Shown: piece after piece, positions 11,490 through 44,136 of the stretch
How the letters are laid out: the number at the start of each line of letters is the position of its first letter
How positions within the stretch are numbered: position 1 is the first letter of the stretch
Origin: Iphione sp. A-MEVVRFRX5
Lineage: Eukaryota
Length of the DNA: 64,000 nucleotides
Direction: 5' to 3'
NCBI GenBank assembly: GCA_976226885.1
Contig: OZ320316.1
Span: 46,376,001 to 46,440,000 of the forward strand
The notes under the pieces: generated by a model
What the model was told of the DNA's origin: nothing
The model's database searches: none
What the model saw: the letters and a program-made list of their open reading frames with translations, nothing else
Position numbers and translations under genes: made by a program

Positions 11490-11653
11490 TAATGGAAGAG
11501 TGTTAGGTGAGCCAGATTCAACTTCATGGATTCAACTTCAGGGGTCTGAAATGGCTTTTTCTTAAGTCTAGTATATACCTCTTTGTTGTAGGTGTGGCAA
11601 GATTTGGGAATCTTGGGTAAGCTGGATCTGATACTGTTTCCAAAATTGATTTA

Positions 11654-12179
11654 CAGAGGAGACTCCAAAACCGAACACTCCAAAACCGAATTTCCTCAAA
11701 TCCGAACAATATTTCCTGGAACCAAACGTTTTTCTCTAATTAGACACTCATATATTTTAGACACTCATATATAAAATTGCAATTTTCGAATCCGAATGAT
11801 ATTATTTGGGTAAATTAGTTAAAATTACACTCAAAAACCAAATGCTCTCCCACAAGTTCGCTGCCTTTGAAGGGTTCGCACCTGGGCCGACACCTGTTGG
11901 CTTGAGTCTGGCCTGGTCGCTCTCCCCCCAAGTTCGTTATAATCAAAGCGAATTGCTCCCGTTTGATGAGCTCACACCTTGGCGAGCTAAATGAGAGCCC
12001 CCCAGTCCCTCTCCCCGTATTGTATTTTTGTAGGTATGAAAACCGTTAAGGTAGGGCCTGGGCCCCCCTAACTGTGTGAAATTGACAGTGGCCTTAGGCC
12101 ACTATTCTAAATCCGAATTATCCCAAAACTGAACGATTTTGGCAGGAACGGCGATTGTTCGGTTTTGGAGTATCCTCTG
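11654..12179 (+). mobile_element. MITE family B (Tc1/mariner-like, TA TSD)
   Basis: 23-bp TIRs CAGAGGAGACTCCAAAACCGAAC / GTTCGGTTTTGGAGTATCCTCTG (1 mismatch), TA on both flanks. Confidence 0.85.
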
Positions 12180-12214
12180 TATTTATTTTAGATTTTCACA
12201 GGGACAATAGTTGG

Positions 12215-13396: not shown

Positions 13397-16026
13397 CTAT
13401 TGATTGGAGAACACTAGTTTCAATAATCGTCTCCTGAAGATTGCTGGGTGTATGCATAGCTTCAGGGCCATTGGCAACTTGTTCCACTGCTTGACTCCTG
13501 CATAGACAAATGAGGTCTTGTAGGTTGCTGTTCGTGGTCTATGCAATGTCAGCCTAACTCCTATGCTCTTTCTAGTACCAATGCCTCCATATAACATTTT
13601 TCTTTGAAAATACCTAGAGGACAAAGGCAATGTAGTAGACAAAGCAGGGATATTCTCCCCCTGAGCTCAAGTGATTGCACTTTCATTCTCCTTCTGATAG
13701 ACAGATTCGTTTGATGTGAAAGTCTCCTACCGTGTACTAAGCCTCGCATCACCCCATTACAGCCTATTTGTAGATAGTCTAGGGTACTTTTACTATGGTT
13801 TACAATGAGCGGTAGGCTATAATCATACTGCGAGAGAAGGAAGCTCTTAAAAAGTTTTACCTTATCAGGGAATGGTATATGTCTCACTATTTTACTAATG
13901 TAGTACCCTTTGCTTCTTGTTGTACTTATGATGTTTTTATCTGACTCTGCCACTTCATATCTGCATGCAGGTAGTATCCTAAGAATTTGCAATCATTAAC
14001 TTTGGATATAGATGTACTATCTATATTAAGTCTAAGTCAAATCTGTGACTTTTCCAAAAAAGCATGTAGAACTTTTTTTCAATGTATAAGACTACAACAT
14101 TTTTTGCTGCTCGTCCTGCTGTATCCATAATGCCTTGTTGTAGTTTTCGTCTCAGAGCAGTAATATTCGAGGCGGTTGCATAGACAGTGATGTCATCAGC
14201 ATGCATTATCGTCTTCATAACTATATGTGAGTCTGGTAAGTCATTTATAAGGACACTGAAAAGGAAAGGGCCCAGTATACTGCCCTGAGGGACTCCGGTA
14301 GCCACTCCAAGCGATTTGGACGAAAATGCTGCCCCTACATGCTTGTTTTCATCTATTCCCTCATACACTTCTTTGGTAATACCTCTGATGCTGTGGCTGT
14401 ACTTTTCATCTTACGGAAACCATGTTGTGTCTCGGAAAAAAGTATGTTCAAATAAGATAGTTAGAGATTTGGTCATATACTAGTCTTTCTAGTAGTTTTA
14501 ATACGACTGGAAGTAAAGCTATGGGTCTATAAATTTTCTTTTCTAAGACAGATCTCTTCTTAAACAATGGAGTGATCCTGGCCAGTTTCCAGCTGTCAGG
14601 GAAGTGTGATGACATGATCAACTAATTGAATATATCACGTAATACATTGGCTGCATGTAGTAGGCTGTCTTTTAATACTCTCATCAGTATAATATCAATT
14701 CCCCTGGGCTTACTTATATTTAGGTTATTTTTATCTTGATTACTGCCAACGTCTGTACAGGGGTGAATTCCCAACCGCGTTCCTGGCACTCTATTGGCAG
14801 GACTGGAATATTCAATTTCCCTAGAAGAATAACCGCTTGATTAATAAAGTATTCATTCAACACATCAGGTACATTTTCTTTGCATACCCATTCTCCGTTT
14901 TCTTTAAAGCTAATGTCCTGTGAAGACTTATCCCTCTTCAGGACCATATAGTTAATAATATCCCAATATTCTTTCACACTTTAACAGGCATGGATTTTGT
15001 TTTTGTTGCATTGTTTTTTAGCTTTTCACTGTGCCTCTTTGCCTTTGACTTGTAGAACTTATATATGCGAAATGAGTCAATGTTATTGTTATGTCTGAAC
15101 TCTGCAAGGAAGTAATTCCTGTTACAAATGTAGTCCGACAGCTCCTTATCCACCCATTACTTTACCCTTTTTGTTAACCCGTTTCTTTATGGGACACATT
15201 GAGTTCACTACTGTTTCGAGTGCCCCTTGAAGGGTTGACCACTTCGTTGTCGCATCATCTGCTACATCAGCCTCTAGAGTTGTTATCATTTCAGACAGGC
15301 GCTCATTTAGTAATGTTTTGTTATAATTTGACCAGTCTTGGATTTCTCTTACCTTCTTTTTGATATGCTCTCTTACCTTTTTGTCTGTGATGAAGCTGGT
15401 TAGATGATCACTGATGGCGTCTGGGAATGTACCACTGTTGGAAATGGTGCTGATGGTATTGAATACCAAATCAATACACGACTTTGCCGTTTCATGAATT
15501 TATGTCATTTCCTTTATGTACTGGTTTATGCCTACTGCAATTACATACACTAAACAAATCATTTTTTGCTCGCGAGTCATTCATGATGCTGACTTTGAAG
15601 TCACCACCAAGAACTATTTCTGAGAATCCTTGCTTCTTGATTTCAGCTAATGTATCTCTTATGTAGTTTATACAAGCAGAGATGTGTCCTTTTGGAGGTC
15701 GGTATATTGATTCCTATGTGGGGTGGTAAGGTAAGTTTTACCCATATCCATTCGACATCTGCTGAATTTACAGAGTACTTGCACAAGTGCTCCGGTTGCG
15801 ATTTAGTACTGACATAAACGGCATCCCTCACCCCGCTTACAGTTTCTGTCTTGCTAATAATAGCATAATCTTCTATCCCGATAGCATGCATGGGTATCTT
15901 CTTAGTCAACCATGATTCAACAATTCCCATAGCAAACACAGACTCCCTTTTTATCTAGTCCTTAGTACAGTCCATCTTATATAGTAGGCTATGAACATTC
16001 AATAAGGAGAAAACACGACCTTTCAT
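13397..16026 (-). pseudogene. LINE ORF2 (APE endonuclease + RT), CR1/L2-like, disrupted
   Basis: MKGRVFSLLNVHSLLYK..GIVESWL (EN start), AISDH (EN end), FPDSWKLARITPLFKK..YRPIALLP, GVPQGSILGPFLF..INDLP..HADD (RT), TSFVYAGVKQWNKLP (C-term); multiple stops and frameshifts. Confidence 0.9.
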
Positions 16027-16520
16027 CTTTTATTATCTTGCTTTTTACAAATAACAATGAGTTGTAGTACAAAGAATGAAATAATAGGGCACTGAATTCG
16101 ACATGATATATTGCTCTAACCTTCACTTACAGTTGCTGCTATGACAAGCGGTGGAAAGTTGATCTCTTGTCTCAGTGATTCAAGTAACTTCCCATTATAT
16201 TTGTCCCGGTCCATTCCTTACTGGCGATTTTCGGATTCAGCAACGAGCAACCTGCACCGAAATAGGAGTCATATGTCCCTTCCACAATTGTTCTCTGCCA
16301 GTCGATATGAGTTCTTCCCTGAAACTGTCACTCTGACACATGCGCACCTTCAAAATGTTGCGCATGATGGATTCCTTGATGTCTTCCCATTGGTCGTTTA
16401 CCTGAATGCTACTCCCACTTCGTTTAGCCATGAGGGGAGAGGTCTCATTCCTGATCTCCTCCGCCAGCTGTTCCATTCCATTGTTGAGTGATTTTCGCTC
16501 TGGCACACATGTTCTACGTA

Positions 16521-16620
16521 TTAGATAAAGTATGAGGACTGAGGATTACATGTTATAAAGACTGAGGCTTTGCCGAGATATTTATAAACATGTAATCCGA
16601 AGTCTGAGGGATTTATCTGA
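16521..16620. repeat. 100-bp imperfect palindrome (mini foldback element)
   Basis: ttagataaa..ggattacatgttataaa / tttataaacatgtaatcc..tttatctga inverted arms. Confidence 0.6.
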
Positions 16621-16960
16621 TTTAAACCACCCCCAATCACAACTGAACGATTTGCCTACTTAGTCAAGAAGCATTAGTCCACCAAGTCGACAGATGACAT
16701 GGATTCCATGCCCCCCTATACAATGTAATGCCCTCATGACCCAGTCAAGAGGGTTGGGTTCACCGAGGTTCACCTGAACAGTTGGCGAGCTGACAGAGCT
16801 GAGACGACCTTGTAAGTGATTGACACCCCACATCCCCCACTGACCCAGTCAAGAAGGATTGTTTTTTTAGAGAGAGAGGGAAAAGGGACCCAGTAGACTA
16901 TGGCCCTGTCAAGAATCAAGAGGCAACAGCCAAGGTGGCCATCAACACACACACTCATCT

Positions 16961-17083
16961 CAGTTTAGAAGGTTTTTGTGCAATTTGGGATCAGTTTAGA
17001 AGGTTTGTGTGTGATTTGGGAGCAGATTAGAAGGGTCTTGTGCAATTTGGAATCAGTTTAAGTTTTTGTGTGATTCGGGATCA
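16961..17083. repeat. ~31-bp minisatellite, about 4 copies
   Basis: Unit cagtttagaaggtttttgtgcaatttgggat repeated with variants. Confidence 0.8.
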
Positions 17084-17114
17084 TGTAAAATATCATTTAA
17101 TGGTCTAAGCTTTG

Positions 17115-17190
17115 TGTGGCCTCTGTGGCGCAGTCGATAAGAGTGCTAGACAGCCTGCAGAAGAGGCCTGTGTGGGTTCGAATCCCCATC
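17115..17190 (+). mobile_element. tRNA-derived SINE head / tRNA pseudogene
   Basis: A box TGGCGCAGTCG and B box GGTTCGAATCC at tRNA spacing; anticodon arm does not pair; AAGCTTTG on both flanks. Confidence 0.6.
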
Positions 17191-17211
17191 AAGCTTTGAC
17201 AGATTCCGTCA

Positions 17212-17487
17212 GGCCAATAACAACACAAAACAACCAAGGGTGACTTTTAATTTTTTTCTTGCTTTTTGAATAACTTTGAAATGCATAATGATAGAGACAT
17301 GTTCTATACACCAAATTGTTCCTTTTATTCAAATCCAACCAATATAAGTGATATTACCATACACATCTGTTGCTTTCATGATCCTTTTACATTGAAAAAA
17401 AAAGAAAAATAAAATAAATGTGACCTATGGACCAACCCTGTATTTTTTCAGCTTGTTACCGGAAACACAGAACTTTTATGTTAGGCC
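17212..17487 (+). mobile_element. MITE family A, left end degraded
   Basis: Interior and right TIR GTTACCGGAAACACAGAAC..TTAGGCC|TAA match family A. Confidence 0.7.
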
Positions 17488-17619
17488 TAATGGACTCGGG
17501 GGGATGGTAGGAACATAGAGAGAGAGTGGTGGCAGGGGTGGTTTAAACTGGTATAATCCTTGCCATTGTATGTGAATGGGTCACAATATAGGGAGGACAA
17601 CGGGTGGTGCTCGCTCTTG

Positions 17620-18040
17620 AATGCCGGTACCTCGTCGGTTTCGTTGGAAAAGCACCTCTTAAATGTAAATCCTTTGAAGAGATTGTCAATGTCTGGGGTG
17701 TAGTTCTTGTCATTCACGCATAGATTCAAATCCCTTACAGTGGCCCGCATACCCTGACGTCTTGCCTCTGCAGCTATTGTGTGTAGTAGGTTGTGTTTGG
17801 GTCTTACATCATAAGGGATATCTTCTCTCAACATGATATATTCTTACACATTTACCTTTCTGAATGAGGATCTGTTTTTGTACATGATATCTCTCGATTT
17901 TATTGAGGATATCACAACAATTATTGGCCTGTTCTTGTCTGAATCTTCATTGTATGTTCCCACCCGTATGACTGAGTCGATATCTCTGTGTCTGATAGGT
18001 GGATGGCCTTTTGAAATACATCAATGCAATCATCTATTAT
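17620..18040 (-). pseudogene. LINE ORF1 RRM/CTD region (L1/transposase-22-like)
   Basis: DIDSVIRVG..KNRPIIVV..IMLREDIPYDVRPKHNLLH..ARRQG..DLNLCVNDKNY matches the HR-G..RPIIV..EDLP..L-I-G-Y ORF1 pattern; runs in frame into the NADAR N-terminus. Confidence 0.7.
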
Positions 18041-18979: not shown

Positions 18980-21391
18980 TAATCCAATAGTGGGGACCCT
19001 GGTCGGGCTGCTAAGCGTACCTGGGTGTATTGTTACTTGCGCTCAGTCAGTCGAGGTCAGTCCACCAAACAGAATGGACCATGCCAGTGGGTTACTGTTA
19101 CTCCAACCAATTTTCCTGCATTCCAACATTACTCCCAGCAATATGGAGGAGAAAATTAACGAAATGATGGCAGCATTTAAAGAAGTGACCACAGAACTCA
19201 AGCATGTCAGAGCCAGAATGGAAAGAATTTAGTCACAAGTCAAGTCCAAGACACCCGCTACAGCCCTTGCTGTCCTCATCTGCTCTTAGGCTCTCTATGG
19301 CCTCTCGCTCACACCAGCCGGTGGCCTCTCAGCAGGTGCAGACGCACCTACTGAACCTCAGCCAGGTGTAGATGGACAAGATGGCGACTCATGCAAAGAC
19401 AGTTCTGATGACCTTCTCCCCTCTCCTGAAGAACATAAGGGGCTTGCTGCAGCTTCAATGAAGGACCTCCTCAACACTGTATACCCCGACAGCCTAGCTG
19501 CCAAAGGTAGGAAGACAAGATAGTCCCCAGCAATATTATTTATATGTAAAAGGGACAGACTAGTCTAAACTTTCTACCCTTAGCAATCATCAGTACATCA
19601 ATGGTCCATTGTTGATGTTGCTGGATGAAAAGGCTCCTTCCAATCTTGGTAAGGAGCATCTTGTTCGTCATTTGATCCAGTTAACCTCTGAGTTCCATCA
19701 TTTTCCTTGGTCTCCTCTGAGAGACTGGGTGGCGGAGATCTGGGAGGCCTACAATTTTGAATGCCACATCCTCTCCAATGATAGGACCATACAACAGTGC
19801 AAGGCCAGGGCTCTGAATGTGTACACTACTGCCTCACTTAGAAAGCCAAAAGATTCTAGTGCCATATGTACAGTGGTTAGCAGGCTAGTGGAAACAGCAA
19901 CCACCCCATGAGATAACAAATCCAATAGTAACACATGCATGTCCTTTATGCTTTCATGTACACTCAAAGACACACAACCACAAATTAGACACCTGTCGTA
20001 CCAACAAGAACCTTGCCAAGCAGGACTCTCCTCCATGGTTGAAGGCCCAGGAGCCCCAGCGATAGTGGAAGGAGTGAGACCAGGAGTGGTAGAACAGCCG
20101 GACCATGTCTCCACCATTGACTACAGCAACACACCCATAGACTTTACCTCTGTATTAATAAAGGGGAATTTCTTTCAGAAATCCGCCCAGAAATTGATTG
20201 TTGTACCCCTGGGGAAATAGTAGCCTGGTCCAAGAGTACTCATCAATGAGATTCCGCCATTGTGCCTCTGTAGCCATGCCATGTAAATTGGCCAAATTGA
20301 TGTTGTTTAAAGGATCCACCAAAACTTGAACATGGCCCATGGCTGGTTGTTGGCAGACACATCTGCATCTAATGCTACATTATTCCCATTTCTATCAATT
20401 AGCATCTGCTGCTAGAGCAGAGACCCACATCCTCTCACCATGAAGCCAGACATTTAAACTGACCCAAGCAAATGTACAGGGGAGGCTCTTGACCAATCAG
20501 CGTACTACATTCGCTATACGTGATCCCCATGACAACAATTACCAACATAACAACTCTCTTCAAAATGCCTGGTCATTGGTCAAAAAGAATGCACTTTCAA
20601 AATCTGAAGGTATCATTGGCTAGGGGACTACCAGGTACCTAGGAAGTGGGCCTAGGATGATGGGAGGGCTGTAAGATGAGCTACTGAAGTTTGGAAAAAT
20701 AGCTCCAAGCAAGGCTTCTTTTGTCTTTGTGCATTCGAGCATCTACCAACTTCAGAGCCATATTGGAGGCACTTATAGTCATCCTAGGAGTCTAATATTT
20801 ACATAGAAAAAACTTCAGGTACAATAAATATGAAAACAATAAAAACCCCATTTTCAATAATTTGACCAACTTGACACAGCTCGATTTTAGCCCCTGTGAC
20901 TTCTGACTCATTAGAATAGGTCACATTTATTGAGTACCCAACCACACAAGCCCCAAGTGAGTATCACAGCATATAACAGCACTGAGACAGTTTGCTCAGG
21001 CAGCAAGTTTAGATGCCTCAATATTATATTTGCACCACATCATTACATCACTGGAGGTGGTGGACAAGAGATCAGAGCACCTGATAGATAGGAAATACTC
21101 AATCACACCTGAACATCTCACACTTATTATCAAATTCCTCTCTCGTTTTGGTCCTTTGGGGGTATACTTAAAGCATCATTTCTCTTTTTATTTTTCTTAA
21201 TGGTCAGGCAGTCAAACATAATACCCAAGACCCCCACATTATTGATCCAAGCAAACAACTAGTCTGATGAGACATAACTTGTTATCAGCATTATATCACA
21301 TCCCTTCATTTGTCAAAAACTATTACGAAGAATCGGCCTCACATAATAACCATCCCAGCTATTCCCAAATCACCCTTGTGCCCATTAATAG
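18980..21391 (+). mobile_element. Decayed DIRS/Ngaro-type tyrosine-recombinase retrotransposon, 5' part
   Basis: Gag-like LVRHLIQLTSEFHHFPWSPLRDW; degenerate RT/RNaseH region ~20120-20700; YR N-half KYSITPEHL..ASFLFLFFLMVRQSNIIP..DPSKQL..LSKTI..IPAIPKSPLCP (21090-21391). Confidence 0.75.
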
Positions 21392-21713
21392 TGTAACTTG
21401 CGTATTTAAATCTCCTTTGAGTTACTCCTTGGAATAAAGTAATACCCCCAAGTGTCGTATGTGTGTTGTTATTCCCACTTGGTAAATCCTCCTATGGTAG
21501 TTAATTCCCTGGCTTAGTAATCCTCATGTGTTAATCCAATACACTACTCCAATAGGCTAACCCTAAGGTAAATCCAAGTGGGTATGTGTTCCTAGCATTC
21601 CCTGAAGAGACAACAGCCACAGCGTAATCCAAGTGCAGACTGGTTTATTGGCCACACAGGGCCCCTTATATATAGGCAGCAGTCAGTCACATGATCATCT
21701 CCAACATGCAACA
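21392..21713 (-). mobile_element. Putative 3' LTR of the Gypsy-like element
   Basis: TGT...ACA ends; on the minus strand TATATAA (~21670) followed ~20 bp later by AATAAA (21644-21649). No matching 5' LTR or TSD found. Confidence 0.45.
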
Positions 21714-21756
21714 CAGTAATTTTTTTTTGGAACCCTTTTGCTACATGTGACCTACA

Positions 21757-22250
21757 TACAGGCTATAAATAGCACACCCAGAGTTCATCAAGTACAGCAC
21801 AGTGCATAAACCTTGGCGACACCGCCAACCCTGTGGCCCAGGAGGCACACTCCTATACTAAAAGGTTGGCGTCACCGCCAGCGATCCCTGCCTACTAGCT
21901 ATAAATAGCACTCATGCCCTACTTACAGGCTATAAATAGCACACCCAGAGTTCATCAAGTACAGCACAGTGCATAAACCTTGGCGACACCGACAGCCCTG
22001 TGGCCCAGGAGGCACACTCCTATACTAAAAGGTTGGCGTCACCGCCAGCGATCCCTGCCTACTAGATATAAATAGCACTCATGCCCTACTTACAGGCTAT
22101 AAATAGCACACCCAGAGTTCATCAAGTACAGCACAGTGCATAAACCTTGGCGGCACCACCAATCCTATGGCCCAAGAGTCGCACTCCCACACTAAAAGGT
22201 TGGTGGCACCGCCAACGATCTCGACTCTGTATGGGAGGCTTAGCAGCACC
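21757..22250. repeat. 167-bp tandem repeat x3 in the Gypsy 3' region
   Basis: GGCTATAAATAGCACACCCAGAG starts at 21761, 21928 and 22095; copies 1 and 2 nearly identical, copy 3 diverged. Confidence 0.95.
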
Positions 22251-23014
22251 GCCTCCCATACCCTACACTCTCCCCTCTTTAAATCCAAATGTCCAGGGGA
22301 ACTTTGGAAGCGAGTAATATTTGAGTAAGGTAGCTACTTACCACTTCTAGCTGGCAGTCAGGCTTGCTCTCTGGGGTAAATATCTTCCTTCAGGAAACAA
22401 CAGTACAACAGTCCCTAAACAAAAAAAACACTCCTCTACTTCTCTTTTTGGAGGGAGGGTCTCCCCCTTGAGTAACGTCCCCAGCTTGCCCCAATATGGG
22501 GTACATACGGCAACCATCAAACAAAACTTTTTCTTTTTGTGGGGGTAAGATCCCCCTTACTTATCTCTTCTTCCTGGAACATCCATGAACAATCTTAAGT
22601 AACTCTTTTTGTGGGGTAGGGCCCCCTTTGTGTTTTCCAGCAAACATCCCCTCTCTCTGGAGGCCAACACAACTGCTCAATACTTTTTTTGTGGGGTATG
22701 AGTCCCCTCCCATTTTCTTAATGCTGAGTTCAAACACCTCCAGCTTGTGCATCAGGTTTCCTTAGTCTCCAACAACGGCTGAGTATACACATCATCTGTT
22801 ACTCCCCAATATGGGGCAAATCAACGGCTTGACTAGTACAGTAACATTTTTTTTTAGGGATACAGTTCCCTTTCCATTTGAGCCAACCGCAACCTTAACT
22901 CAGGGTAACACTCTTAGGTAAATCACGAGTACAATATCATCAATAAGCAGCTGAAACTGGGGGTAATAGACTGGTCGTCACAGGTGCATGAGCAGGGCGA
23001 TGCAGTGCCACTGC

Positions 23015-24421
23015 CTAGTCTCGACTACTCGGCCCCTCATCCATGTATTCCTCCTCCCCGTCCCCCCAGATGTCTCCGAGGTGGAGGAGGCGCTGAGTTG
23101 GTGGAGCATAACCACAAATGTCGGCTAGGGTGGGGTGGAGTTTCTGATACTGTTCCCGTCTCTCCTGGGTAGCTTGGGCCCAGCTCTGGCCCACCGGATC
23201 GGGGTGCGTGCGTTGTCCCTGGATGAAGTCTTCGGCGGCCTCCACCGCTTTATTGTTCAGCTTGAGGAGCTGGTCCAGATTTCCCCACTCTTCCTCCCGG
23301 GGCACCTGCAGACCGGGGAGTATGAAGGCAGGGCGGCGACGTAAAGGCCTCATCAAGGGTCCCAGTAGATCGTCCTCTTGATTGCTCTCCGCCATGTGGA
23401 CAACCCAAGCCAGTGCTAGGGATGCTACAAAACGCTGCGCTGGGGACATACGATTCCAGGCATGCGGTGGCCAGGTGAGATGATCTGGCAGCTTCACCTG
23501 AGTGGACACGAGTGTATCTTGTAGAACGGCCACCTGGGGGTCGACAACGCCATCCAGGATCTCTCGTACATAATTGGCGCTGGGGGCGATGTGTGGCTCC
23601 GGTAGGAGATGACGGGAAAGACGAGACAAGTGCCCCTCTAGTAACAGCAGCGGGCGGGGAGCACTGCTCAGTGCAAGGCTGTCCACCCCAGTCCCATCGG
23701 GGTCGGGCCCTGACCGCCAGGGGGATAAGAGACTGGTGACTGGTGCTTCGAGTCCCAGCACCGGCTCAGCCGGTCCTGGAAGTGCGGATGGTCTCTCGGG
23801 CGACAGGACCGCAGCCGCCTGGCTTAGGAGTGGGTCCCTTGATCTGTGCGCCGGGCCGGCCTGTCGCTGAGCCCCCAAGCGGGCATCGTGTTCTACTGCT
23901 GGTCCACTCTCATGCTGAGGAGGGTCCGCTGGCTGATCCGGCATTGTCAGGCAGCGTCGCATGGGTGGCGGGGGCGGGGCTCGACAGGTGCTTTCTGCCA
24001 ACATCTTTTCTGCCTCCCCACGGCTCAAGGCCCACCCCATGTTGCGCAGTTCTCGAGCCCTCAGTATAATTTCAGTCAACTCATCATCCGGGGCCATTAC
24101 GTCTCCTCTTGGGGTTGCATCATATTGTCGATGGTAGGCCTTTTCCATGAGGCCAAAGTCAGCCACCCAGTGGTGGTAATGCCGGATGTGCTCAACCCAG
24201 GATTGTTTGTGGGAAAGTATACTGGGACAATAGAGGCACCTCATGTGCCTTCTCCTCTTACCTAGGTGATAATCGTCCACATGTCTCTTGAGAGAGTCCC
24301 CGGGGAAGAACGGCCGCGGCAGAGTGCACCTCTTGCATAAAACTATTCCCTCCGGCTTCTCCATCCCAGGTTTGACCACCCGGGGCAGCCGGCCAGGCTC
24401 GTCCACTGGTCGTCGGGGCAT
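23015..24421 (-). CDS. Intact 468-aa accessory ORF of the Gypsy-like element: two N-terminal C2H2 zinc fingers, Pro-rich linker, C-terminal domain of unknown family
   Basis: CKRC-x14-H-x4-H and CLYC-x12-H-x4-H; C-terminal WPPHAWNRMSPAQR..FILPG. ATG at 24421 lies 17 nt after a splice acceptor; the ORF-track start at 24553 is a TTG inside the predicted intron. Confidence 0.75.
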   Translation of the reverse strand: MPRRPVDEPGRLPRVVKPGMEKPEGIVLCKRCTLPRPFFPGDSLKRHVDDYHLGKRRRHMRCLYCPSILSHKQSWVEHIRHYHHWVADFGLMEKAYHRQYDATPRGDVMAPDDELTEIILRARELRNMGWALSRGEAEKMLAESTCRAPPPPPMRRCLTMPDQPADPPQHESGPAVEHDARLGAQRQAGPAHRSRDPLLSQAAAVLSPERPSALPGPAEPVLGLEAPVTSLLSPWRSGPDPDGTGVDSLALSSAPRPLLLLEGHLSRLSRHLLPEPHIAPSANYVREILDGVVDPQVAVLQDTLVSTQVKLPDHLTWPPHAWNRMSPAQRFVASLALAWVVHMAESNQEDDLLGPLMRPLRRRPAFILPGLQVPREEEWGNLDQLLKLNNKAVEAAEDFIQGQRTHPDPVGQSWAQATQERREQYQKLHPTLADICGYAPPTQRLLHLGDIWGDGEEEYMDEGPSSRD

Positions 24422-24438
24422 CGTTGCAGGCGGTGACA

Positions 24439-24576
24439 CTAACAGAAATATGAGGCGGGGCTGCTGCGATTTCCCCGCGTAGGCTAAGTCCTGGCGGTAC
24501 CGCCGACTTTTTGCAAGGTGCTTGTTGGCGGGATCGCCACGAGTAGCTCCCAAATGTTCAGATTATCACGGCTTAC
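24439..24576 (-). other. Predicted 138-nt 5'UTR intron of the ZnF ORF
   Basis: Donor GCAG|GTAAGC at 24576; acceptor cctcatatttctgttag|TGTCACC at 24439. Confidence 0.5.
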
Positions 24577-25310
24577 CTGCTAGCAGCTCCCCTTCGACTT
24601 CGGTGGCGGGGCCGCCACCGATTCAGCTGAGTGCTTGCGCCAATGATTCTACGAAGAACTACGGCTATATTTCCTCGTGCTGGGTCTCTCCTCTCCGCCT
24701 TGCTTTCCCAGGTACTTGCCTGATGTCCAGTTCCAGGGGAATTCCTCTCTTATGCCCCTGTTTAGCTCACTTACAACCGACTTTTGTAATCTGCCTTCCC
24801 GATCGTAATCCACGCTGGTTCGAAAATGAGGCATACCGGATGTTTTGGTTGTCCACTTCCGGTTGGTTTCGTGGTGACCCCGCCAGCGTCTTTTAGTTGA
24901 TTATTCCGCCCCTGTCCTGTTTTCACCGTGGTAATATCGGTGGCGTATCCGCCAGTCTTCTGTCCCAGGATCCCATCTCACAAGGTGGAATATGTTCCCG
25001 TTGGCGGTGTCGCCTGCCGAGTTACGTCTCTTTTCGGTGGCGGTGCCGCCACTCTTCTTACACTAGCGCTCGCATCTCTCCCAGTGGGACCGCCAACCTT
25101 TTCTCGACGGGAGGCGGTTTTTGCGTCATAGAATTTCCTCGGTGGTGGGGTCGGCAACGTCTTCTGCATCATCCTTTTTACTCATCGGCGGGGTCGCCAA
25201 CGTTTTTCTCGTTGGTGGTGGATATTGCGTCGTACTTTTTATCCGTCGGCGGGGTCGCCACTCATTTTCTCCTCCATCGTGACGCTATATAAGTCGGCGG
25301 GGGGCGTGGC
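24492..25310. promoter_or_regulatory. Array of TGGCG-N4-CGCCA palindromes plus TATA and GC box upstream of the ZnF ORF
   Basis: About 10 copies between 24492 and 25260; CTATATAAG at ~25285-25293; GGGGGCGTGGC at ~25300-25310. Confidence 0.55.
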
Positions 25311-26559
25311 CCGCCGTCAGTCGTTGACTCGCCGCCGGTAAGAGCAGGTTGAGCCTACCACGGCTCTTCCTCCCTGCCTCATTTCACTGTCCCCCTATCC
25401 GATGTCATATTTGCTTGTCCAGTGTTTCCCTCTTAGGGGCTTTCCTCTTCCAGAGATAATTGGGGGGTAATTTTTGGATGCTAGGGGGGGTCACTCTTCT
25501 TCTCTGGGGGGTAACTAATCATATTTCCCCCGGTTTAAATGACATAATTACATTCTACCTTATCCTAGTGGCCGAGCAGCTGGTGTCTCCCAGAGGAAAT
25601 GGACAGCATCTTGGTCTTCGCCTTCTCCTAGAGGAAATGGACAGCATCTCGGATGGCCTTCCTCAGGGCAATTGCAAACAGTTCTTGTTCAGCCAGTCGG
25701 TGACTACCCCCCCCCCTTTCCACTGGGGGTGACATCCATACACAGTGCTATTCTTCATCACTATGTCCACCAAGGGCCTGGCGCATTCCAGAGGCCATGG
25801 GTTGCATCCTGGCCCAAGCGTTCCCCCAGCAGGGATGACCAGCAGTTCGAATAGCGCTCCGTGTGGCAGCGGTGCAAAGTCTCGTTTCATTCTCACCCCT
25901 CGGCAGCGAGGGGAAACTAACTCTTCGTTAAACAGCCTGTTCGCGTCCTAGTCACCCTCTCGGTTGCTCCTCTCAGGGGCCTACCTATCGACCCCTCTGG
26001 AGATCGTTTCGAGCTTTCCATGTCTAACTCCGGGCCCTCTCCAATAGCCCTGTACATTCCATAAGCTCTTTTGTGCTCTCTGGGATGTTCATCCTCCCAC
26101 TCCAGACCTTTTTAAGCGTCCCAGGATGTCCGTCCTCCTCCTAGACCTTTTCAGGGCCCACATGGCCCCCAGGATGTCTACTCTCTCCTTCCGAGGAGCA
26201 TTCTAAGCTTCTGGCAGCTCCAGGCTCTCCTCGCTTTTGCCTCCCAGAACTTTTTGGACGCTTACAGGGAGTCTACCCCTACACGGACTCGTTTTGGATG
26301 CTGGTGATCCTCAGGACGTCCGTCATGTCCTACTGGAACTTTTGAACGCTACACGCTCCAGGTGTTCCACCACCTTCCATGAACTTTTTGAGTGCCACCT
26401 GGGTGCTTATACCCCCAATTCTTCCCGACTCCGGCTAACTCCTGGGGGGGGACCGTCCCCCCATGCCTGAAGTCTTCGCCTCGGCCTCTCCATTCGCCTG
26501 CGACGCCACCATCTTCTTCCTTAGCGTCAGAATTCACTGAGGGAGATTGTCTCCTTGGT

Positions 26560-27300
26560 TACGTCATAGCCGGTTCCGATGAACCACCTTAAACTTCGCC
26601 TTTCGTGTCCGTTGTGTCACCAAACGCTCGTCGTTGAGCCGCCTGACTACCTCCTACTCTCCTGGGTCGCCTCCAAGACCCTTATTTCCCCCACTAGCCC
26701 CTGTTACTCCCACCCCGGGGCAGTTAGGGCCCCCTATGGGTGCTGCTTAATGGGATGGGGACCCAGAGAATAAATCTCGGATTGTACCACGTCAGGCTGC
26801 CCCACTGTCTGAGCTAGCAGCCCAAAGATCCCTCGCTCCATCCACTTCTCATCCAACCCCTCTATCAGAGACCTCAGGATTGGTCAGTGAGACAGTGGCC
26901 CCCCCCAACTCCCATGGAAAGGGACACGTCACGGGCTCCACGTAGAGTGGTTACTTTCCCAGGACGCTGCTGCGCCCCTGACTCACCATCAAAACGAACC
27001 CTCCCTTGGGCCAGGTCTATGACTGCCTGATGATGGTTTAAGAAATCATTCCCCAAGATACCCTCTTCTCCAGTCTGAGCTATCAGGAAAGGGTGAAAAA
27101 AAAACTGTCTACCCGCTACTTCCTATCCCTAGGACCTCTGTTTCTAGCATGGGGATTACATGTCCAGCCGCCCCGGTAATCCAGGTCTCCCCTCTTTTAC
27201 CTTCAAGGCCAAAGACTACCCCAGGGTAAACAATGCAAACTCCTACCCCCGTATCCACCAGGAGTATATAGTTGCCACCCCTTATGCTTACCTGTAAGTG
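26560..27300 (-). pseudogene. Gypsy-like pol remnant: aspartic protease, first RT motif, integrase C-terminus; RT/RNaseH/IN core deleted
   Basis: ILLVDTGVGVCIV..GILGNDFLNHHQAVIDL (protease); PHPIKQHP* (pre-RT PIKQxPYR motif); EVVRRLNDERLVTQRTRKAKFKVVHRNRL (GPY/F-like IN tail). Confidence 0.8.
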
Positions 27301-27787
27301 TGGCCCCCGGCCTTGCTCCCTTATGCACCCCAGGGGGACTGGATCAGCCATGCCCCCCGGGCCTTTTTTTTTGTGAAGAAAACTCTGGTGGAAAGAACTT
27401 TATGTGTTTTTTTCCGAGTTTTTTTCACCTGTTTCTTCAATTTTTCCCACCTAGGTTTTGCCTTATCCATAGAGTTTTTATAAGCCAAGCTGTAAGTCAG
27501 GTCTGTCCATCAAAGTTCAGTCTGTCTATATGTATAGGCATCATATTGTTTGGAACGTGGTATTTCAGTGTAAAACCCCGGTGCGACCGCGCAAACTCTG
27601 TCATGGGGTGTTCCTGCCCATGAAATGTATAGGCATTATAAATAGGATATTTATCGAGATGTATATTATACAAGGGTCAACAAGCCTGTATCTACGTGGG
27701 TAACTATATGAGTCTATGGATGTTATGACATCACATTCTATTCATTCAGCGTCATTTTAAAACGATCTTTTAACGGTGTAAGACGTT

Positions 27788-28330
27788 ATGACTCCTGGTG
27801 GTGTCTTGCTGTATAATAAGGGGAAATATTGCAAGAGATGTGGTGTCACCCACCCTCTACCAGTGGGGAGGAACGGTAAGGAGTTCTGTGACACAGAGAA
27901 AAAGAAGAATGATGAAATCAAGCCTACTAATGGTGATGATCTGCATAGTTCCTTGTCTTGCCTGAAGAATCTGATTGAGTTGTTGGCAGCAGCCGGTTCG
28001 TCGAAGGTGGATGAGGAGAGGGGGCTCCGTGCTAATGCTGACATTGATTCCCCAGGTGATTCTTGTGAATCATGATAGATTAAAGGCTGCTTGTAAGAAA
28101 TCGGGGCTTACCGGCATCACCTGTCACTCATTTAGACGTGGAGGAGCATCATTTTTTGCCTTGAAGGGTGTTCCCCTGCCCGATATCAAATGTAGAAGTG
28201 ACTGCATCAAGTTCCAACTGTCTTTTCAAGTATGTTGATCCTAAATTGATGATCTTTTTATTTCTGATGAGGCTCTCTTCTGTTGATTGGGTTTGGGGAG
28301 CTCAGCTTATATATTGTCTAACCTTCGTGT
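27788..28330 (+). mobile_element. DIRS/Ngaro-type remnant: gag-like N-terminus joined to YR C-terminus
   Basis: YCKRCGVTHPLPVGRNGKEFC (CxxC..H.P.G gag-like motif); RLKAACKKSGLTGITCHSFRRGGAS..GV..IKCRSD/SSNCLFKY (HxxR and catalytic Tyr region). Confidence 0.7.
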
Positions 28331-28347
28331 CCCTTGTTATTAATATA

Positions 28348-28840
28348 CAGAGGTTATTCCAAAACCGAACACTCAAAAACTGAATTTCCCCAACTCCGAA
28401 CAATATTTTGGGGAACCAAATGTTTTTCTCTATTTAGACACTCATATAACCGAACATTTTTATCCCAAATCTGAACAATTTTGGTTTGGTCTGAGTTTTG
28501 TCGATTTTCGAATGAATTTGGCTCATTTTCGCCGATTTTTGGACGAATTTGGCTCATTTTTGGACAAATTTGGCTCATTTACACCGATTTTTGGACGAAT
28601 TTGGCTGATTTTTGGACGAATTTGGCTGATTTTTGGACGAATTTGACATATTTTAGGATGAATTCGGCCGATTTTCACCAATTTTTGGACGATTAAAGGT
28701 TTGGTCGAGGTAGGGCCTGGGGCCCCCCCTAACAGATTGAAATTGGCAGTAGCCTGAGGCCACTATTCAAAATCCGAATTGTCCCAAAACCGAACGATTT
28801 TGGCGGAAACGGCGATCGTTCGGTTTTGGAATTCTCTCTG
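28348..28840 (+). mobile_element. MITE family B, second copy, with an internal ~20-bp tandem array (~28505-28690)
   Basis: TA|CAGAGGTTATTCCAAAACCGAAC ... GTTCGGTTTTGGAATTCTCTCTG|TA; subterminal ~120 bp match 11654-12179; internal unit gatttttggacgaatttggct. Confidence 0.85.
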
Positions 28841-29366
28841 TATATGCCTATAGAATATTTAGGGAGATATATATACCTATATGTAAGGTCAAATGCCCGT
28901 TTGCAACCACCCCTGCATACCAAGCTGAAGTAGTCACATTTGTGGTATTGGCTGCATACCATTGCTCTTTTTAGGCCAAAAGTGGTGGATCTGATCAGTA
29001 AAAGTCCTAATAGCAGTGAATTTGATTAGTAAAAGTCATAAAAGTGGCAAATGTGACAAGTAAACGGCCTAAATGCAATGAATTTAGTATGTGCAAGTGA
29101 CTTTCTATGAGCACATATACCCATCAGAGGTTGCAGTGACACCTCTGGAGGCACTTTAGACAATGAATAACCCTTCAGCTCCCTGAGCTTGGACATCTGA
29201 GTGGTTGTGGTGACACCTTTGGTTAAAAAGTGATATTCATATCCAATAGACCCAACCCAAAAGTTGTAGGGTCGCATGCTGGTTTGGCAGACAAGAGGTC
29301 TGGTCGCATAGTTGTATTTTGATACTTAGGTTAATAACAGTAAATATTTCTGCCCCGAGCTCATTT

Positions 29367-32330: not shown

Positions 32331-35300
32331 TCTGACTGTCCCTGATCTGAACACATGGAAACAGAGTGTCTGTGGTTGTCTGTGGTCATCCAGAAATTTG
32401 GCCCGTTTTCAGGATGACCATAGCATCTGGAGAAAAAGTCTCAACGAATTTAAGTGATAAGTAATAAAACTGTTCCCAAACTGGGCATTAGTGTTCCGCA
32501 TCATCCCGTGTGTATTCCACTGCATTTCTTTTCTTATACATACATATATATATATATGCATGATGTCTTCAACATCTCAGTAAGACAGAGATGCAAATGT
32601 TCGCTTCATTAGGATGGCAAAAGAGTCCATGATATTTTCTTAATTTCAAGCGACACACATTTTGTTTATATGTGGTTATGACATCATCGTGTCCTTTTGT
32701 ATTTCTATTTTGCACTCCATTTTCCATCTCGTTGTCTAAAGTATCCTAATTGCTCCTAAATTATAAGTTATTTTTATGACAGATGGAGACTAGAGACACC
32801 CGACGGAATAATCACTTATTTTATTACCAATACATGATTTTGTACAAAATTCATTACATTGTCTCTGAATAAACCGACTAAAACGGCATTGCCGCCAAAT
32901 AAAATGTTCAATGAAAAAGCGCAACTCAAACTTGCCATCGACCAAGATACAAAATGGGTTGACTACAGTTAAGAGGGCGGTGTGGGGATGCGGGCAGGGA
33001 GGGGATTAGATGTGGTCACGTGGTGACTGCTGCTGCCCTCTGTCGTACAAAAATGGAACCCAAGGTTAAAGCCCATCTTTCCTTGATACAGAAGACCTCA
33101 GCATATGTAATCAGTGCAATCCAAGAGGACTGAAAATGAACTAAATAACTGACTAAATTGGTGACAAAAAATAGTGACAAAATGACCGCCAATAATGGAC
33201 GCCAGGCCCCCTATGGCAGCGTTCTGAGACTCACGGTGTCAAAGTTCAAGTAATTGCTCGTGGGGGAGGGGTGTTTTGATTTGCATATTCTCATTCTTCT
33301 GTTTTTCTCAATGATTGTTGCCTTAAATTTTGTTGTGTATTCATTGAGTAAAACCCAAGTCTGAACCTTTGTGGGAAACACGGCTGACATAATAAATTGT
33401 ACCTTGTTCAGGCATGTAGAGAAGGTAACGCTGCATATTATCAGATTCGACCTGTACCACGTGGATTTCAAAACCACGTTAACTGCGGGACCGCCCACGT
33501 GAATTGATCACGTGGCCGAGACTTCGGATGAGGAGTAGAAGAGGAGGGGGATGTTAAGGATGCTGCCACTTCTGGTATATATTGCTGCCATGATGCAATG
33601 ACTGAAATGACGCCACAGTTACTTACATGACGTCATAATGACAAATCTGTGCGGTAATTTTGTTCGGCGTTTTATAGATTCTTTTTCATGTTCAGGGCGT
33701 GGTTTTGTGTATGAGGTAATTAAAGAATCAAATAAGACGTCCAATGAGGTGGCATAGAGTCCTGGCGTGTCCCACTAACCCGTATTTTTCACAAATGGGG
33801 ATGGAGTGGGTGGGAGGATTCCGGGTGCAGGACGATGTGAGTAAGGGGCGAAAGGTACGGGATAAAGATCCTAGTAGGTGGCTGTGGGCGCTTGTAACGC
33901 GCATCTTTTATATTACTGTCACATTGAAATATCTTCTAGGATACTTGTATGGGCAAGAGAGAGCAAATCTGACTGAGGTGATTGAAACACAAAGAGGTCA
34001 AGGTTTTATTACAGACATATATCTACGGCTCGACCAAGGGATGGACTGCTGGTCTGGCATTGATGTCTAATAGCTGGCCATCAAAGTCGAGAGCAAAGGG
34101 AGGAGATGAGGGATAAGGGAGGGTACCCATGGACCAGAGAGAGTAAGATGTGAATATAGGGATTCGGCTAGAGGTAGGAGGGGGGAAAACAAGAGTTCCG
34201 GAATTCAAAGAGAGTCTGGGAGGATGATAGGACCCTGTGAGCTTGTGCGCATGTACAGCTCCAAATTGATATGCCTGGACTGACCTGATTGTCCCAGATA
34301 TACACATATATACAGATAATATATATATTTATATCTAGATGAATAGATATATTCAAACGTATCTCTGCCATATATGTACAAGTGTATCATCCAGATATAC
34401 ATGCACACATAATAAGATACTGCCACAACATAAAGTTTGAAAAAGTCCCAATAAAGGAGTGAATAGAAAATGAGGCAATAGTATGAACTGTCCCTATAGA
34501 TTATGGTAAGTGTGTCATCACGTTGACCATGTTGCCATGTGTATATCATTTGCCGATATCATATATTGTTTAAGACACCTTCCGTGTGGTTTCCTGTTGT
34601 TCCTAAGGAGTTGTCATGAACACATCGTGCATGTAGTATCCTATCCTTGAGATTTCGGGGAGTGAAAAATAGGCATCGACAGAAGATGGTGAACGCACGC
34701 AATCTTATTTGCACATTCGCTATTAGTCTGGAGTGGACAAGTCCAAATTTGCTGCAACACCCACCACTTACCGATCAACGCTAATGGGTGTAATCTAAAC
34801 TTCCATTGCTTGTCTGCTATCTACTTTGAAACTATTGATATCTGCAAAAACACTAGAATACAACGTTCCATTGACCACCTCTCACGGCTCCTCATCCCTA
34901 GCCTCTGGGCTGCGGCGAAAGAGAGGAAAGAATTGATTGCCGATTGCCGTCAAACAGTATACCAATTTCAATCCTATATCAAAACGTAAACTATTCAATA
35001 CAGTCAACTGTGCTGTCTCGGAATCTGCACTATAGGGATTGTTGTGATAATTGGCTTCAATAATAACAAGTATGTATAAAAATTGACCTTCACACTGGAC
35101 ATTGCTTCGTCAAGAGCAAATACTCAAGAGGTGACAAAGAAGACCCTGGGGGGAGAACATAGTTAAGCGAGATATACAAGTACAGAGTGACATATAAAAT
35201 CGCAGATACAACATAAAAGAGCTGAGTAGACGAAAACAAAAACAATCGTGAATGGCAAAGAACTAAACGATTGATCGGGAAGGAAAGATAGTCTGAGGGG

Positions 35301-44090: not shown

Positions 44091-44136
44091 GCTCCCCACT
44101 CCCGGTAAGAAAGCGGCGGCGTCGATACCTGCCGCT

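What the first reader, a model, noticed from the sequence alone, without database searches (positions are those of the whole stretch)
21814..25260. About 15 copies of palindrome TGGCG-N4-CGCCA flank the zinc-finger ORF on both sides
Seen: perfect copies at 21814, 21867, 22034, 24526, 24604, 24941, 25038; one-mismatch copies at 21981, 22148, 22201, 24492, 24872, 25002, 25186, 25247. Spacers vary (ACAC, TCAC, GGAT, GGGC, TATC, GTGC, GTAC, GGGT) while arms and spacer length are fixed. I saw none inside the 1.4-kb ORF and none elsewhere in the window. Ten fixed bases give about 0.06 expected perfect hits per 64 kb at uniform composition. Three variants (TGGTG, CACCA) are CpG-type transitions falling on both strands, which favours a DNA site over an RNA tetraloop. 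Inference: operators for a dimer of the element's own two-finger protein (two C2H2 fingers read about 5-6 bp per half-site), i.e. a retrotransposon-encoded transcription factor/operator circuit for autoregulation or anti-silencing.
Basis: partly seen in the sequence, partly recalled or inferred. Interest (0 to 1): 0.85.

Follow-up and report, generated by a model that had tools for sequence, protein, structure and literature searches.

The report
Palindrome site arrays flanking orphan zinc-finger gene
An annelid genome carries a GC-rich island in which a gene with no known relatives, encoding a protein with two zinc-finger-like motifs, is bracketed by two clusters of a 14-base CpG palindrome that look like docking sites for a paired DNA-binding protein, but which protein binds them is untested.

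Summary
TGGCG-N4-CGCCA occurs 7 times perfectly and 8 times with one mismatch, all in two clusters (21814-22214 and 24492-25260). Chance predicts 0.01 perfect sites for the window and 0.04 core sites for the right cluster from its own composition.

The count is inflated. The six left sites are two sites inside a 167-bp unit repeated about three times. The last three right sites sit in 43-61-bp repeats. About ten occurrences are independent.

In the five promoter-proximal right sites the arms are 92% identical pairwise, against 28% for spacers and flanks. So the motif itself was conserved, not just copied along with longer repeats.

Variants and folding show no strand preference, which favours a double-stranded DNA site. 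The right cluster is CpG-island-like (o/e 1.08). The two clusters appear mirror-oriented.

The 468-aa ORF has a coding signature but no homologue in about 15 billion proteins. No RT, LTR, TIR or target-site duplication was found, so "retrotransposon" is unsupported. Absence of sites from the ORF is what chance predicts.

Binding by the ORF's own protein is plausible and is my leading candidate, but it is untested. Only one copy of the locus could be examined.

The parts
21748..22248 (.). Left (ORF-downstream) cluster. A 167-bp unit is repeated about three times. Each unit holds two dyad sites (A at 21814, 21981 and 22148; B at 21867, 22034 and 22201) and two CTATAAATAG boxes.
   Evidence: 167-bp period, 94-97% identity for units 1-2, unit 3 more diverged. 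(sites). (TATAWAWR boxes on the + strand; arm divergence equals that of the rest of the unit).
24492..25260 (.). Right (ORF-upstream) cluster with ten dyad sites at 24492, 24526, 24604, 24872, 24941, 25002, 25038, 25143, 25186 and 25247, plus a deletion variant near 25085. It lies inside a CpG-island-like segment, 24422-25320.
   Evidence: (8 core sites against 0.044 expected from local composition). (GGCG-N4-CGCC is the top dyad in an unbiased count). (CpG o/e 1.08; arms 0.92, spacer 0.28 and flanks 0.28 pairwise identity in the proximal five sites).
23015..24421 (-). Orphan ORF of 468 aa from the first ATG. It has two C2H2-like fingers (C-x2-C-x14-H-x4-H and C-x2-C-x12-H-x4-H) joined by a basic linker, a Pro/Ala-rich middle and a probably helical C-terminal half.
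   Evidence: 515 stop-free codons; GC1/GC2/GC3 = 0.70/0.48/0.62; best codon score of the six frames. (zf-C2H2_2 at E = 0.34 only). (no homologue anywhere).
24427..24440 (-). Decayed dyad remnant (three mismatches) 6-19 nt upstream of the ATG.
   Evidence: (I6, I7: complementary to left site B), and direct reading.
25286..25293 (+). TATATAAG box 26 nt beyond the outermost right site. It fits the consensus only on the + strand, so it points away from the ORF.
   Evidence: and sequence.
21644..21649 (-). First AATAAA on the ORF-sense strand downstream of the ORF, 165 nt beyond the outermost left site.
   Evidence: and sequence.
22430..22880 (.). Second hairpin-repeat family between the ORF and the left cluster. 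On the ORF-sense strand it reads G4-5-loop-C4-5 followed by ACAAAAAG, in units of about 70-80 bp.
   Evidence: (D6).
21700..27400 (.). GC-rich block (GC 0.45-0.67 against about 0.40 in the flanks) that contains all of the above. The + strand is pyrimidine-rich from 24500 to 27300.

Best explanation
The dyads are double-stranded-DNA binding sites for a sequence-specific protein that binds as a symmetric dimer, with each half reading GGCG.

The upstream cluster is the control region of the ORF. It runs from about 70 to 840 bp upstream of the ATG, is CpG-island-like, and lies between the ORF and an outward-facing TATA box. The downstream cluster is a tandemly amplified second module, in mirror orientation.

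The leading candidate ligand is the ORF's own two-finger protein. That would make the unit a self-contained regulator-plus-operator cassette. In logic it resembles maize Spm TnpA, which binds short subterminal repeats on both sides of its own gene.

Shown here: the motif is non-random, the arms are specifically conserved, the sites are strand-symmetric, the right cluster keeps its CpGs, and the ORF has a coding signature.

Inferred: that a protein binds the sites, that it binds as a dimer, the identity of the ligand, and the regulatory outcome.
For: - Enrichment is 100-fold or more over global and local expectation.
- The spacer length is fixed at 4 and no other spacing occurs.
- Arms are 92% identical against 28% for spacers and flanks in the five proximal sites, so selection acted on the motif and not on a longer repeat.
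- It is the top dyad in an unbiased count of the right region.
- There is no strand preference in the variants or in folding energy.
- The right cluster has CpG o/e 1.08. The ORF has 0.62 and the adjacent 25321-26870 segment has 0.56, so this segment escaped CpG decay as bound or unmethylated promoters do.
- In the CpG-poor left cluster, 10 of 15 CpGs lie inside the sites.
- The clusters mirror each other. Left sites fit the right-site matrix better when inverted. There is a 15/15 inverted match with z = 4.6, against z = 1.0 for the direct orientation.
- The only gene between the clusters encodes finger-like motifs with a basic linker.
- The block, the sites and the ORF are all absent from the syntenic 18 kb of the nearest available relative.
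Against: - No binding data exist, and only one copy of the locus could be examined.
- The fingers are below the Pfam threshold, lack a canonical linker and have H-x4-H spacing. C2H2 fingers usually bind asymmetric sites as monomers.
- After the 167-bp duplication the arms diverged as fast as the rest of the unit, so this copy shows no ongoing constraint.
- All strict TATA matches near the clusters face the + strand, antisense to the ORF.
- The mirror orientation rests on two independent left sites and on spacer composition.
Confidence: 0.4

Rival explanations
1. The dyads are sites for a host transcription factor. The clusters would then be ordinary homotypic enhancer or promoter modules of a mobile or young gene, like U3 enhancer repeats or the Su(Hw) site array of gypsy. 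The ORF protein would have nothing to do with them.
For: - It rests on the same enrichment, arm-conservation and CpG-island evidence.
- The left unit combines the dyads with five CTATAAATAG boxes that fit a MEF2-type or TATA consensus, as composite enhancers do.
- TATA boxes lie 20-26 nt beyond a dyad in both clusters.
- Half of the sites carry NFI-like TTGGC or GCCAA ends.
Against: - No known factor matches. NFI needs TTGGC-N5-GCCAA, and here the spacing is N6. A spacer longer than 5 bp lowers NFI affinity (PMC12630593).
- The positions conserved here (the inner CG) are ones NFI ignores, while the outer T/A that NFI needs are variable.
- No copy of the dyad occurs in the other 58 kb of the window or in about 30 kb of the relative's locus. 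That is weak evidence, because few are expected by chance.
Confidence: 0.3
2. The clusters are subterminal inverted repeat arrays of a foldback-like or otherwise decayed DNA transposon. A transposase or accessory protein would recognise them for end pairing, and the ORF would be that accessory protein or a passenger.
For: - The two clusters are mirror-oriented around the ORF.
- Multiple short sites lie on both sides, as in CACTA, hAT and P elements (my own knowledge of those families).
- A metagenomic MITE with about 40-bp TIRs carries two TTGGCGACGTCGCCAA dyads internally. This shows that such dyads occur in class II elements, but that hit was selected by the search pattern.
Against: - No TIR, no TSD and no DDE-like ORF were found.
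- The GC-rich block runs 2 kb beyond the right cluster.
- The left cluster owes its copy number to a recent tandem duplication.
Confidence: 0.12
3. The signal acts at the RNA level. A transcript running from about 25260 to about 21625 on the minus strand would carry one cluster in each UTR. The dyads would form 5-bp hairpins, or pair 5' with 3', to serve packaging, cyclisation or protein binding.
For: - A TATA-like box and an AATAAA bracket both clusters on the ORF-sense strand, although the TATA fits only the other strand.
- Left site A and right site 25002 are complementary over 15 nt on the same strand.
- The fold z-score is -2.7.
- H-x4-H fingers also occur in RNA-binding zinc-finger classes (my own knowledge).
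Against: - The opposite strand folds equally well.
- There are no compensatory changes. Wobble-preserving variants split three and three between the strands, and two variants break pairing on both.
- In the minimum-free-energy fold few dyads form their own hairpin.
- The loops fit no tetraloop class.
- An 840-nt leader with many upstream ATGs would be a poor 5' UTR.
Confidence: 0.08
4. The arrays are a neutral by-product. A short palindrome-containing unit was amplified by slippage or unequal exchange in a decaying repeat-rich element, and it has no function.
For: - Six left sites and three right sites sit in recognisable tandem repeats.
- The block is full of other degenerate repeats and G/C hairpins.
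- Arms show no constraint since the 167-bp duplication.
Against: - The five proximal right sites share nothing but the arms, with flanks and spacer at 28% identity, which is random. Neutral decay of an old tandem array should erase the CpG-containing arms first.
- Spacer length is invariant.
- CpGs are retained in the right cluster.
Confidence: 0.1

Closest known systems
Maize En/Spm (CACTA) TnpA and its 12-bp subterminal repeats (from my own knowledge, not tested here)
   Same: A non-catalytic element-encoded protein binds many copies of a short motif clustered on both sides of its own gene. The sites lie in and next to a CpG-rich, methylation-sensitive promoter, and binding serves both regulation and end recognition.
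   Different: In Spm the motif is not a self-palindrome; pairs of sites create the dyads. Here there are no CACTA termini, no second transposase ORF and no sequence similarity. The host is an animal and the family is unknown.
Viral origin and regulator dyads: papillomavirus E2 sites (ACCG-N4-CGGT) and EBNA1 site arrays (from my own knowledge)
   Same: These are short palindromes with fixed arms and a free 4-bp spacer. They occur in multiple copies in a control region and are bound by a dimer of a protein encoded by the same genetic element.
   Different: The protein folds are different (a beta-barrel dimer, not fingers). Nothing here indicates a virus or an episome.
Su(Hw) binding-site array in the gypsy 5' UTR, and tandem enhancer repeats in retroviral U3 (from my own knowledge)
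   Same: About a dozen copies of one short motif are packed into a few hundred bp of a mobile element's control region. A tandem enhancer module carries TATA-like boxes.
   Different: The ligand is a host protein and the sites are asymmetric. Those arrays are not mirrored around a gene.
NFI dyad TTGGC-N5-GCCAA
   Same: It is a palindromic dyad that shares TGGC and GCCA, and it is bound by a dimer (PMC12630593).
   Different: The spacing here is one bp longer (TGGC-N6-GCCA). The inner CG is conserved and the outer T/A is not, which is the opposite of what NFI requires.

Membership tests
C2H2 zinc-finger protein (the ORF product) | Significant match to a C2H2 finger profile | tested here: not met
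   Pfam gives only zf-C2H2_2 at E = 0.34 and 11.6 bits, against a cut-off of 26.9. The PDB sequence search found nothing.
C2H2 zinc-finger protein (the ORF product) | C-x2-4-C-x12-H-x3-5-H spacing with hydrophobic core positions | tested here: inconclusive
   Finger 2 (CLYC...HIRHYH) fits C-x2-C-x3-Phi-x5-Phi-x2-H-x4-H. Finger 1 has x14 instead of x12. This was read directly. No fold confirms it (AlphaFold pLDDT 38).
LTR retrotransposon or endogenous retrovirus | Two long terminal direct repeats | tested here: not met
   Self-BLAST of 21000-29000 against the window finds only the 167-bp tandem repeat. The clusters share only the motif.
LTR retrotransposon or endogenous retrovirus | Reverse transcriptase or integrase coding region in the element | tested here: not met
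   No RT-like ORF lies in 21700-27400. The only RT hit in the window is at 14024-14410, in a different, AT-richer element.
LTR retrotransposon or endogenous retrovirus | Retropepsin domain | tested here: inconclusive
   The motifs LLVDTGVG and ILGNDFL lie on the minus strand at 27399-26877, split by a frameshift. There is no support from Pfam, PDB or homologue searches.
TIR DNA transposon with subterminal repeats (CACTA, hAT, P, foldback) | Terminal inverted repeats and a target-site duplication | tested here: not met
   There are no inverted repeats beyond single dyad sites and no TSD candidate.
TIR DNA transposon with subterminal repeats (CACTA, hAT, P, foldback) | Multiple short binding motifs near both ends in opposite orientation | tested here: met
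   The two clusters are inverted relative to each other. The support is moderate because only two left sites are independent.
TIR DNA transposon with subterminal repeats (CACTA, hAT, P, foldback) | Transposase (DDE or other) ORF | tested here: not met
   The ORF matches no transposase family.
NFI binding site | TTGGC and GCCAA half-sites separated by exactly 5 bp | tested here: not met
   The separation is 6 bp in every copy. The requirement for 5 bp is taken from PMC12630593.
Structured RNA element (hairpin repeat) | Strand-specific folding and compensatory base changes | tested here: not met
   Both strands give an equal z-score. No variant is compensatory. There is no Rfam match in the window.
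Plain tandem repeat or satellite by-product | Motif copies are no better conserved than the rest of the repeat unit | tested here: inconclusive
   This holds for the left cluster and partly for the distal right sites. It does not hold for the five proximal right sites, where arms are 0.92 and flanks 0.28 identical.

The most novel reading that the evidence does not exclude
An orphan, lineage-specific gene in an annelid encodes a two-finger protein that dimerises on a CpG palindrome (GGCG-N4-CGCC). The gene carries its own mirrored operator arrays on both sides. The result would be a portable, self-regulating and possibly methylation-sensing or anti-silencing gene cassette, with no relative among known transposon or viral regulators.
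Probability: 0.25. Interest if true: 0.7.

Novelty: new variant of a known kind. Interest (0 to 1): 0.5.

Why it matters
If the ORF protein does bind these dyads, this would be an animal counterpart of the Spm TnpA logic, in which a mobile or young gene carries both a sequence-specific regulator and its operator arrays. Its DNA-binding module would have no known relatives, and the CpG-containing site could report or resist methylation. That would give a compact, testable system for studying how selfish or newly born genes secure their own expression in a methylating invertebrate genome. It would also supply a new dyad and protein pair for synthetic regulation. If a host factor binds instead, the locus is an ordinary though clean example of a homotypic site cluster in a repeat-rich promoter.

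Tried and rejected
**Searches for relatives of the ORF all came back blank.**
- Word-indexed search.
- Exhaustive phmmer against 1.84 billion representatives.
- Exact-protein look-up.
- PDB sequence search.
- Viral contigs.
- tblastn against every fetched locus and against the window.

No cross-copy or cross-species test was therefore possible.

**PR-like ORF.** Pfam, PDB and the homologue search gave nothing.

**Structure.** The single-sequence AlphaFold model has pLDDT 38, so I did not run a fold search on it.

**Element ends.** I looked for LTRs, TIRs and TSDs and found none.

**Rfam.** No hit in the window.

**Metagenome scan for dyad pairs.**
- It returned more than 120 loci.
- None aligns to the window.
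- The hits are unrelated families, including a bacterial gene, GTTGTTGGCG...CGCCAACAAC hairpin pairs, tandem arrays and a roughly 300-bp MITE.

**Viral scan for dyad pairs.** It returned 44 loci, which I did not follow up.

**Syntenic locus of the nearest relative.** I walked 18 kb and found no dyads, no ORF and no alignable empty site.

**Ideas considered and rejected.**
- NFI: wrong spacing and the wrong positions conserved.
- A primer-binding site (the TGG start): the motif is multi-copy and lacks a tRNA T-arm complement.
- YY1, CTCF, Sp1, E2F and EGR: each fails on its core bases. I judged these by eye from memory of the consensus sequences, not with matrices.
- The LINE-like RT at 14 kb as part of this element: it is 7 kb away and has a different composition.
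Full report
**Observation**

The pattern TGGCG-N4-CGCCA has 7 perfect matches in the 64-kb window, all at the coordinates given. Dinucleotide shuffles give 0.01, and none of 100 reaches 7.

With one mismatch there are 17 matches against 0.51 expected. Fifteen fall in two clusters, 21814-22214 and 24492-25260. The other two, at 5559 and 43895, are what chance gives.

A two-mismatch scan adds 25143. A deletion variant lies near 25085. A three-mismatch remnant sits just upstream of the ATG at 24427-24440.

Only a 4-bp spacer occurs. The conserved core is GGCG-N4-CGCC, with 11 perfect copies, all in the clusters, against 0.18 expected.

The surrounding block is GC-rich, so I repeated the test against first-order Markov simulations of each segment.
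- The right cluster has 8 core sites against 0.044 expected.
- The whole GC-rich block has 11 against 0.066.
- The equally GC-rich neighbouring gene has none.
- The ORF is expected to hold only 0.03-0.06 sites, so their absence there says nothing.

**How many sites are independent**

The left cluster is a 167-bp unit repeated 2.8 times at 94% identity. Each unit has two dyads 53 bp apart and two CTATAAATAG boxes. Its six sites therefore count as two.

Since that duplication the arm bases changed at 5-15%, against 3-10% for the rest of the unit. This copy shows no constraint on the arms, although the numbers are small.

In the right cluster the five distal sites (25002-25247) share flanks. Three of them lie in 43-61-bp repeats (leave-one-out scores).

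The five proximal sites (24492-24941) share nothing but the arms. Pairwise identity is 0.92 for arms, 0.28 for spacers and 0.28 for flanks. An unbiased count of all 4+4 dyads in the right region puts GGCG-N4-CGCC first.

So the 'mere by-product of longer repeats' refutation holds for part of the count but fails for the proximal sites. About ten occurrences are independent, where 0.1 is expected.

**DNA or RNA**

- Of the single-base variants, three keep a wobble pair on the + strand, three keep one on the - strand, and two break pairing on both. None is compensatory.
- Four of the ten arm mismatches are CpG transitions. Four more hit the outermost T/A.
- The 899-nt right region folds with z = -2.7 on each strand, and few dyads form their own hairpin in the minimum-energy fold.
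- Symmetry often reaches into the spacer (GGCGG..CCGCC), which a 5-bp stem with a tetraloop would not need.
- Rfam finds nothing in the window.

These points favour a double-stranded site read by a symmetric dimer.

**Anatomy of the locus**

The clusters bracket an ORF on the minus strand (23015-24421, 468 aa from the first ATG). It sits in a run of 515 stop-free codons.
- It has a coding signature: GC1/GC2/GC3 = 0.70/0.48/0.62, and the best codon score of the six frames.
- It has two C2H2-like units, C-x2-C-x14-H-x4-H and C-x2-C-x12-H-x4-H, joined by a basic linker.
- Behind them lie a Pro/Ala-rich middle and a probably helical C-terminal half.

The right cluster begins 71 bp upstream of the ATG and runs for about 770 bp to a TATATAAG box at 25286. 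That box fits the consensus only on the + strand, pointing away from the ORF.

This 900-bp segment has CpG o/e 1.08. For comparison, the ORF has 0.62, the next 1.5 kb has 0.56 and the window has 0.63. It looks like a CpG-island-type, possibly bidirectional, promoter.

The left cluster lies 800 bp beyond the stop codon. It is CpG-poor (o/e 0.48), with 10 of its 15 CpGs inside the dyads.

**Orientation of the two clusters**

The sites have a polarity given by a G-first spacer and a T-rich tail. Read this way, the left sites match the right-site matrix better when inverted. The best left-right alignment is a 15/15 inverted match with z = 4.6, against z = 1.0 for the direct orientation.

The clusters therefore appear to mirror each other around the ORF. 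I rate this as moderately supported, because only two left sites are independent.

**What the block is**

The window is from an annelid. The intronless 1102-aa gene at 40791-44099 has annelid homologues, including Paralvinella, Capitella and Lamellibrachia, and the best match is 79% identical. It is not human.

The dyads and the ORF lie in a GC-rich block, about 21700-27400. Decayed repeats flank it.

I found no LTRs, TIRs, TSDs or RT in the block. The only retroelement hint is a DTG...ILGNDFL pair on the minus strand at 27399-26877, interrupted by a frameshift. Pfam, PDB and homologue searches do not support it. A real RT fragment lies 7 kb away in an AT-richer element. 'Retrotransposon-encoded' is therefore not established.

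The ORF has no relative in any resource available. A single-sequence AlphaFold model is uninformative, with pLDDT 38.

In the nearest available relative I walked 18 kb along the syntenic contig. Conserved anchors stop at window position 32812. No dyad and no ORF is present there. This fits a lineage-specific insertion or a young gene, but the divergence is too great to find an empty site.

**Search for the motif elsewhere**

A metagenome scan for two dyads 30-46 bp apart returned more than 120 loci. None aligns to the window. They belong to unrelated families:
- a bacterial coding sequence;
- pairs of GTTGTTGGCG-N4-CGCCAACAAC hairpins;
- several tandem arrays;
- a roughly 300-bp MITE with about 40-bp TIRs and two internal TTGGCGACGTCGCCAA dyads.

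These hits were selected by the pattern, and no control scan was possible. They show only that such dyads occur in other repeats, including one class II element.

**Mechanism**

I commit to protein-binding DNA sites read by a symmetric dimer. The upstream cluster would be the ORF's control region, and the downstream cluster an amplified, mirrored second module.

The ORF's own finger protein is the leading candidate ligand. My reason is that an orphan DNA-binding-like gene and an orphan site array sit together, and the arrays bracket that gene alone. I put this at 0.4.

The rivals are:
- a host factor (0.3);
- subterminal repeats of a decayed DNA transposon recognised in trans (0.12);
- a neutral repeat by-product (0.1);
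- an RNA role (0.08).

NFI is the nearest known dyad, but it needs a 5-bp spacer and a longer one lowers affinity (PMC12630593). The positions conserved here are also the ones NFI ignores.

**Comparison and novelty**

In logic the closest systems are these, all cited from my own knowledge:
- maize Spm TnpA with its subterminal repeats;
- viral regulator dyads such as papillomavirus E2 ACCG-N4-CGGT;
- host-factor arrays such as the Su(Hw) sites of gypsy.

Membership in any of these families fails on sequence and on defining features (see the membership table). I rate the finding as a new variant of a known kind: a homotypic binding-site array attached to a mobile or young gene.

**Verdict**

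The DNA-site reading passes every test I could run. The operator-of-its-own-protein idea is attractive and untested. The retrotransposon label is unsupported. With a single copy and no homologues, I score interest at 0.5.

Noticed in passing
window 22430-22880: A second hairpin-repeat family. Five units of about 70-80 bp each read CTTTTTGT-GGGG(G)-loop-CCCC(C) on the + strand. On the ORF-sense strand this is a G/C hairpin followed by ACAAAAAG. Two CCCCAATATGGGG palindromes lie at 22489 and 22804. The family sits between the ORF stop and the left dyad cluster.
   Followed up: partly
window 21764, 21900, 21931, 22067, 22098 and 25286: Every strict TATAWAWR match near the clusters lies on the + strand, antisense to the ORF. 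The five left boxes (CTATAAATAG) also fit a MEF2-type CTA(W)4TAG site. In both clusters a box lies 20-26 nt beyond a dyad.
   Followed up: partly
window 40791-44099 (-): An intronless 1102-aa membrane protein of family DUF8415 (PF28478). It is GC-rich with CpG o/e 1.08 and is conserved across annelids at 39-79% identity. Its syntenic locus in ENA ERZ25767047 shares a non-coding anchor at window 32812-32898, 84% identical.
   Followed up: partly
window 26877-27399 (-) and 27975-28235 (+): A retropepsin-like motif pair (LLVDTGVG and ILGNDFL) is split by a frameshift. A tyrosine-recombinase-like fragment (HSFRRGGA) lies on the other strand. Both are below the Pfam threshold and have no homologues.
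   Followed up: partly
window 13564-17843 (-): A decayed non-LTR-like retroelement. It has an RVT_1 match at 14024-14410 (E = 1.9e-7) and an endonuclease-like ORF upstream. It is unrelated in composition to the dyad block.
   Followed up: partly
window 28343-28845 and 11645-12182: A MITE-like repeat with 28-nt inverted ends and an internal 21-bp tandem array (28496-28683). Two copies in the window are about 87% identical.
   Followed up: no
L003, L019, L041, L067, L106, L111 and about 15 further loci (metagenomes Ga0209562 and Ga0066192): A MITE of about 300 bp with about 40-bp terminal inverted repeats (AGCTCAAATTCCACTGGGACC...). It carries two TTGGCGACGTCGCCAA dyads around a long palindrome, and its many copies have unrelated flanks. 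The host organism is unknown and shares no sequence with the window.
   Followed up: partly
L010, L021, L025, L033, L064, L087, L095, L097, L109, L116: Pairs of 24-nt palindromes, GTTGTTGGCG-TCCC-CGCCAACAAC and its spacer-inverted twin, lie 30-45 nt apart in low-GC metagenome contigs from several samples. They often sit at contig ends. Their nature was not examined.
   Followed up: no
window 25320-26470: Further degenerate repeats lie beyond the right cluster. TCTCCCAGAGGAAATGGACAGCATC occurs twice (25586 and 25624). A unit of about 50-60 bp with CCAGGATGTCC...CTTTT recurs across 26040-26400. Long G/C palindromes are present, for example at 26444.
   Followed up: no
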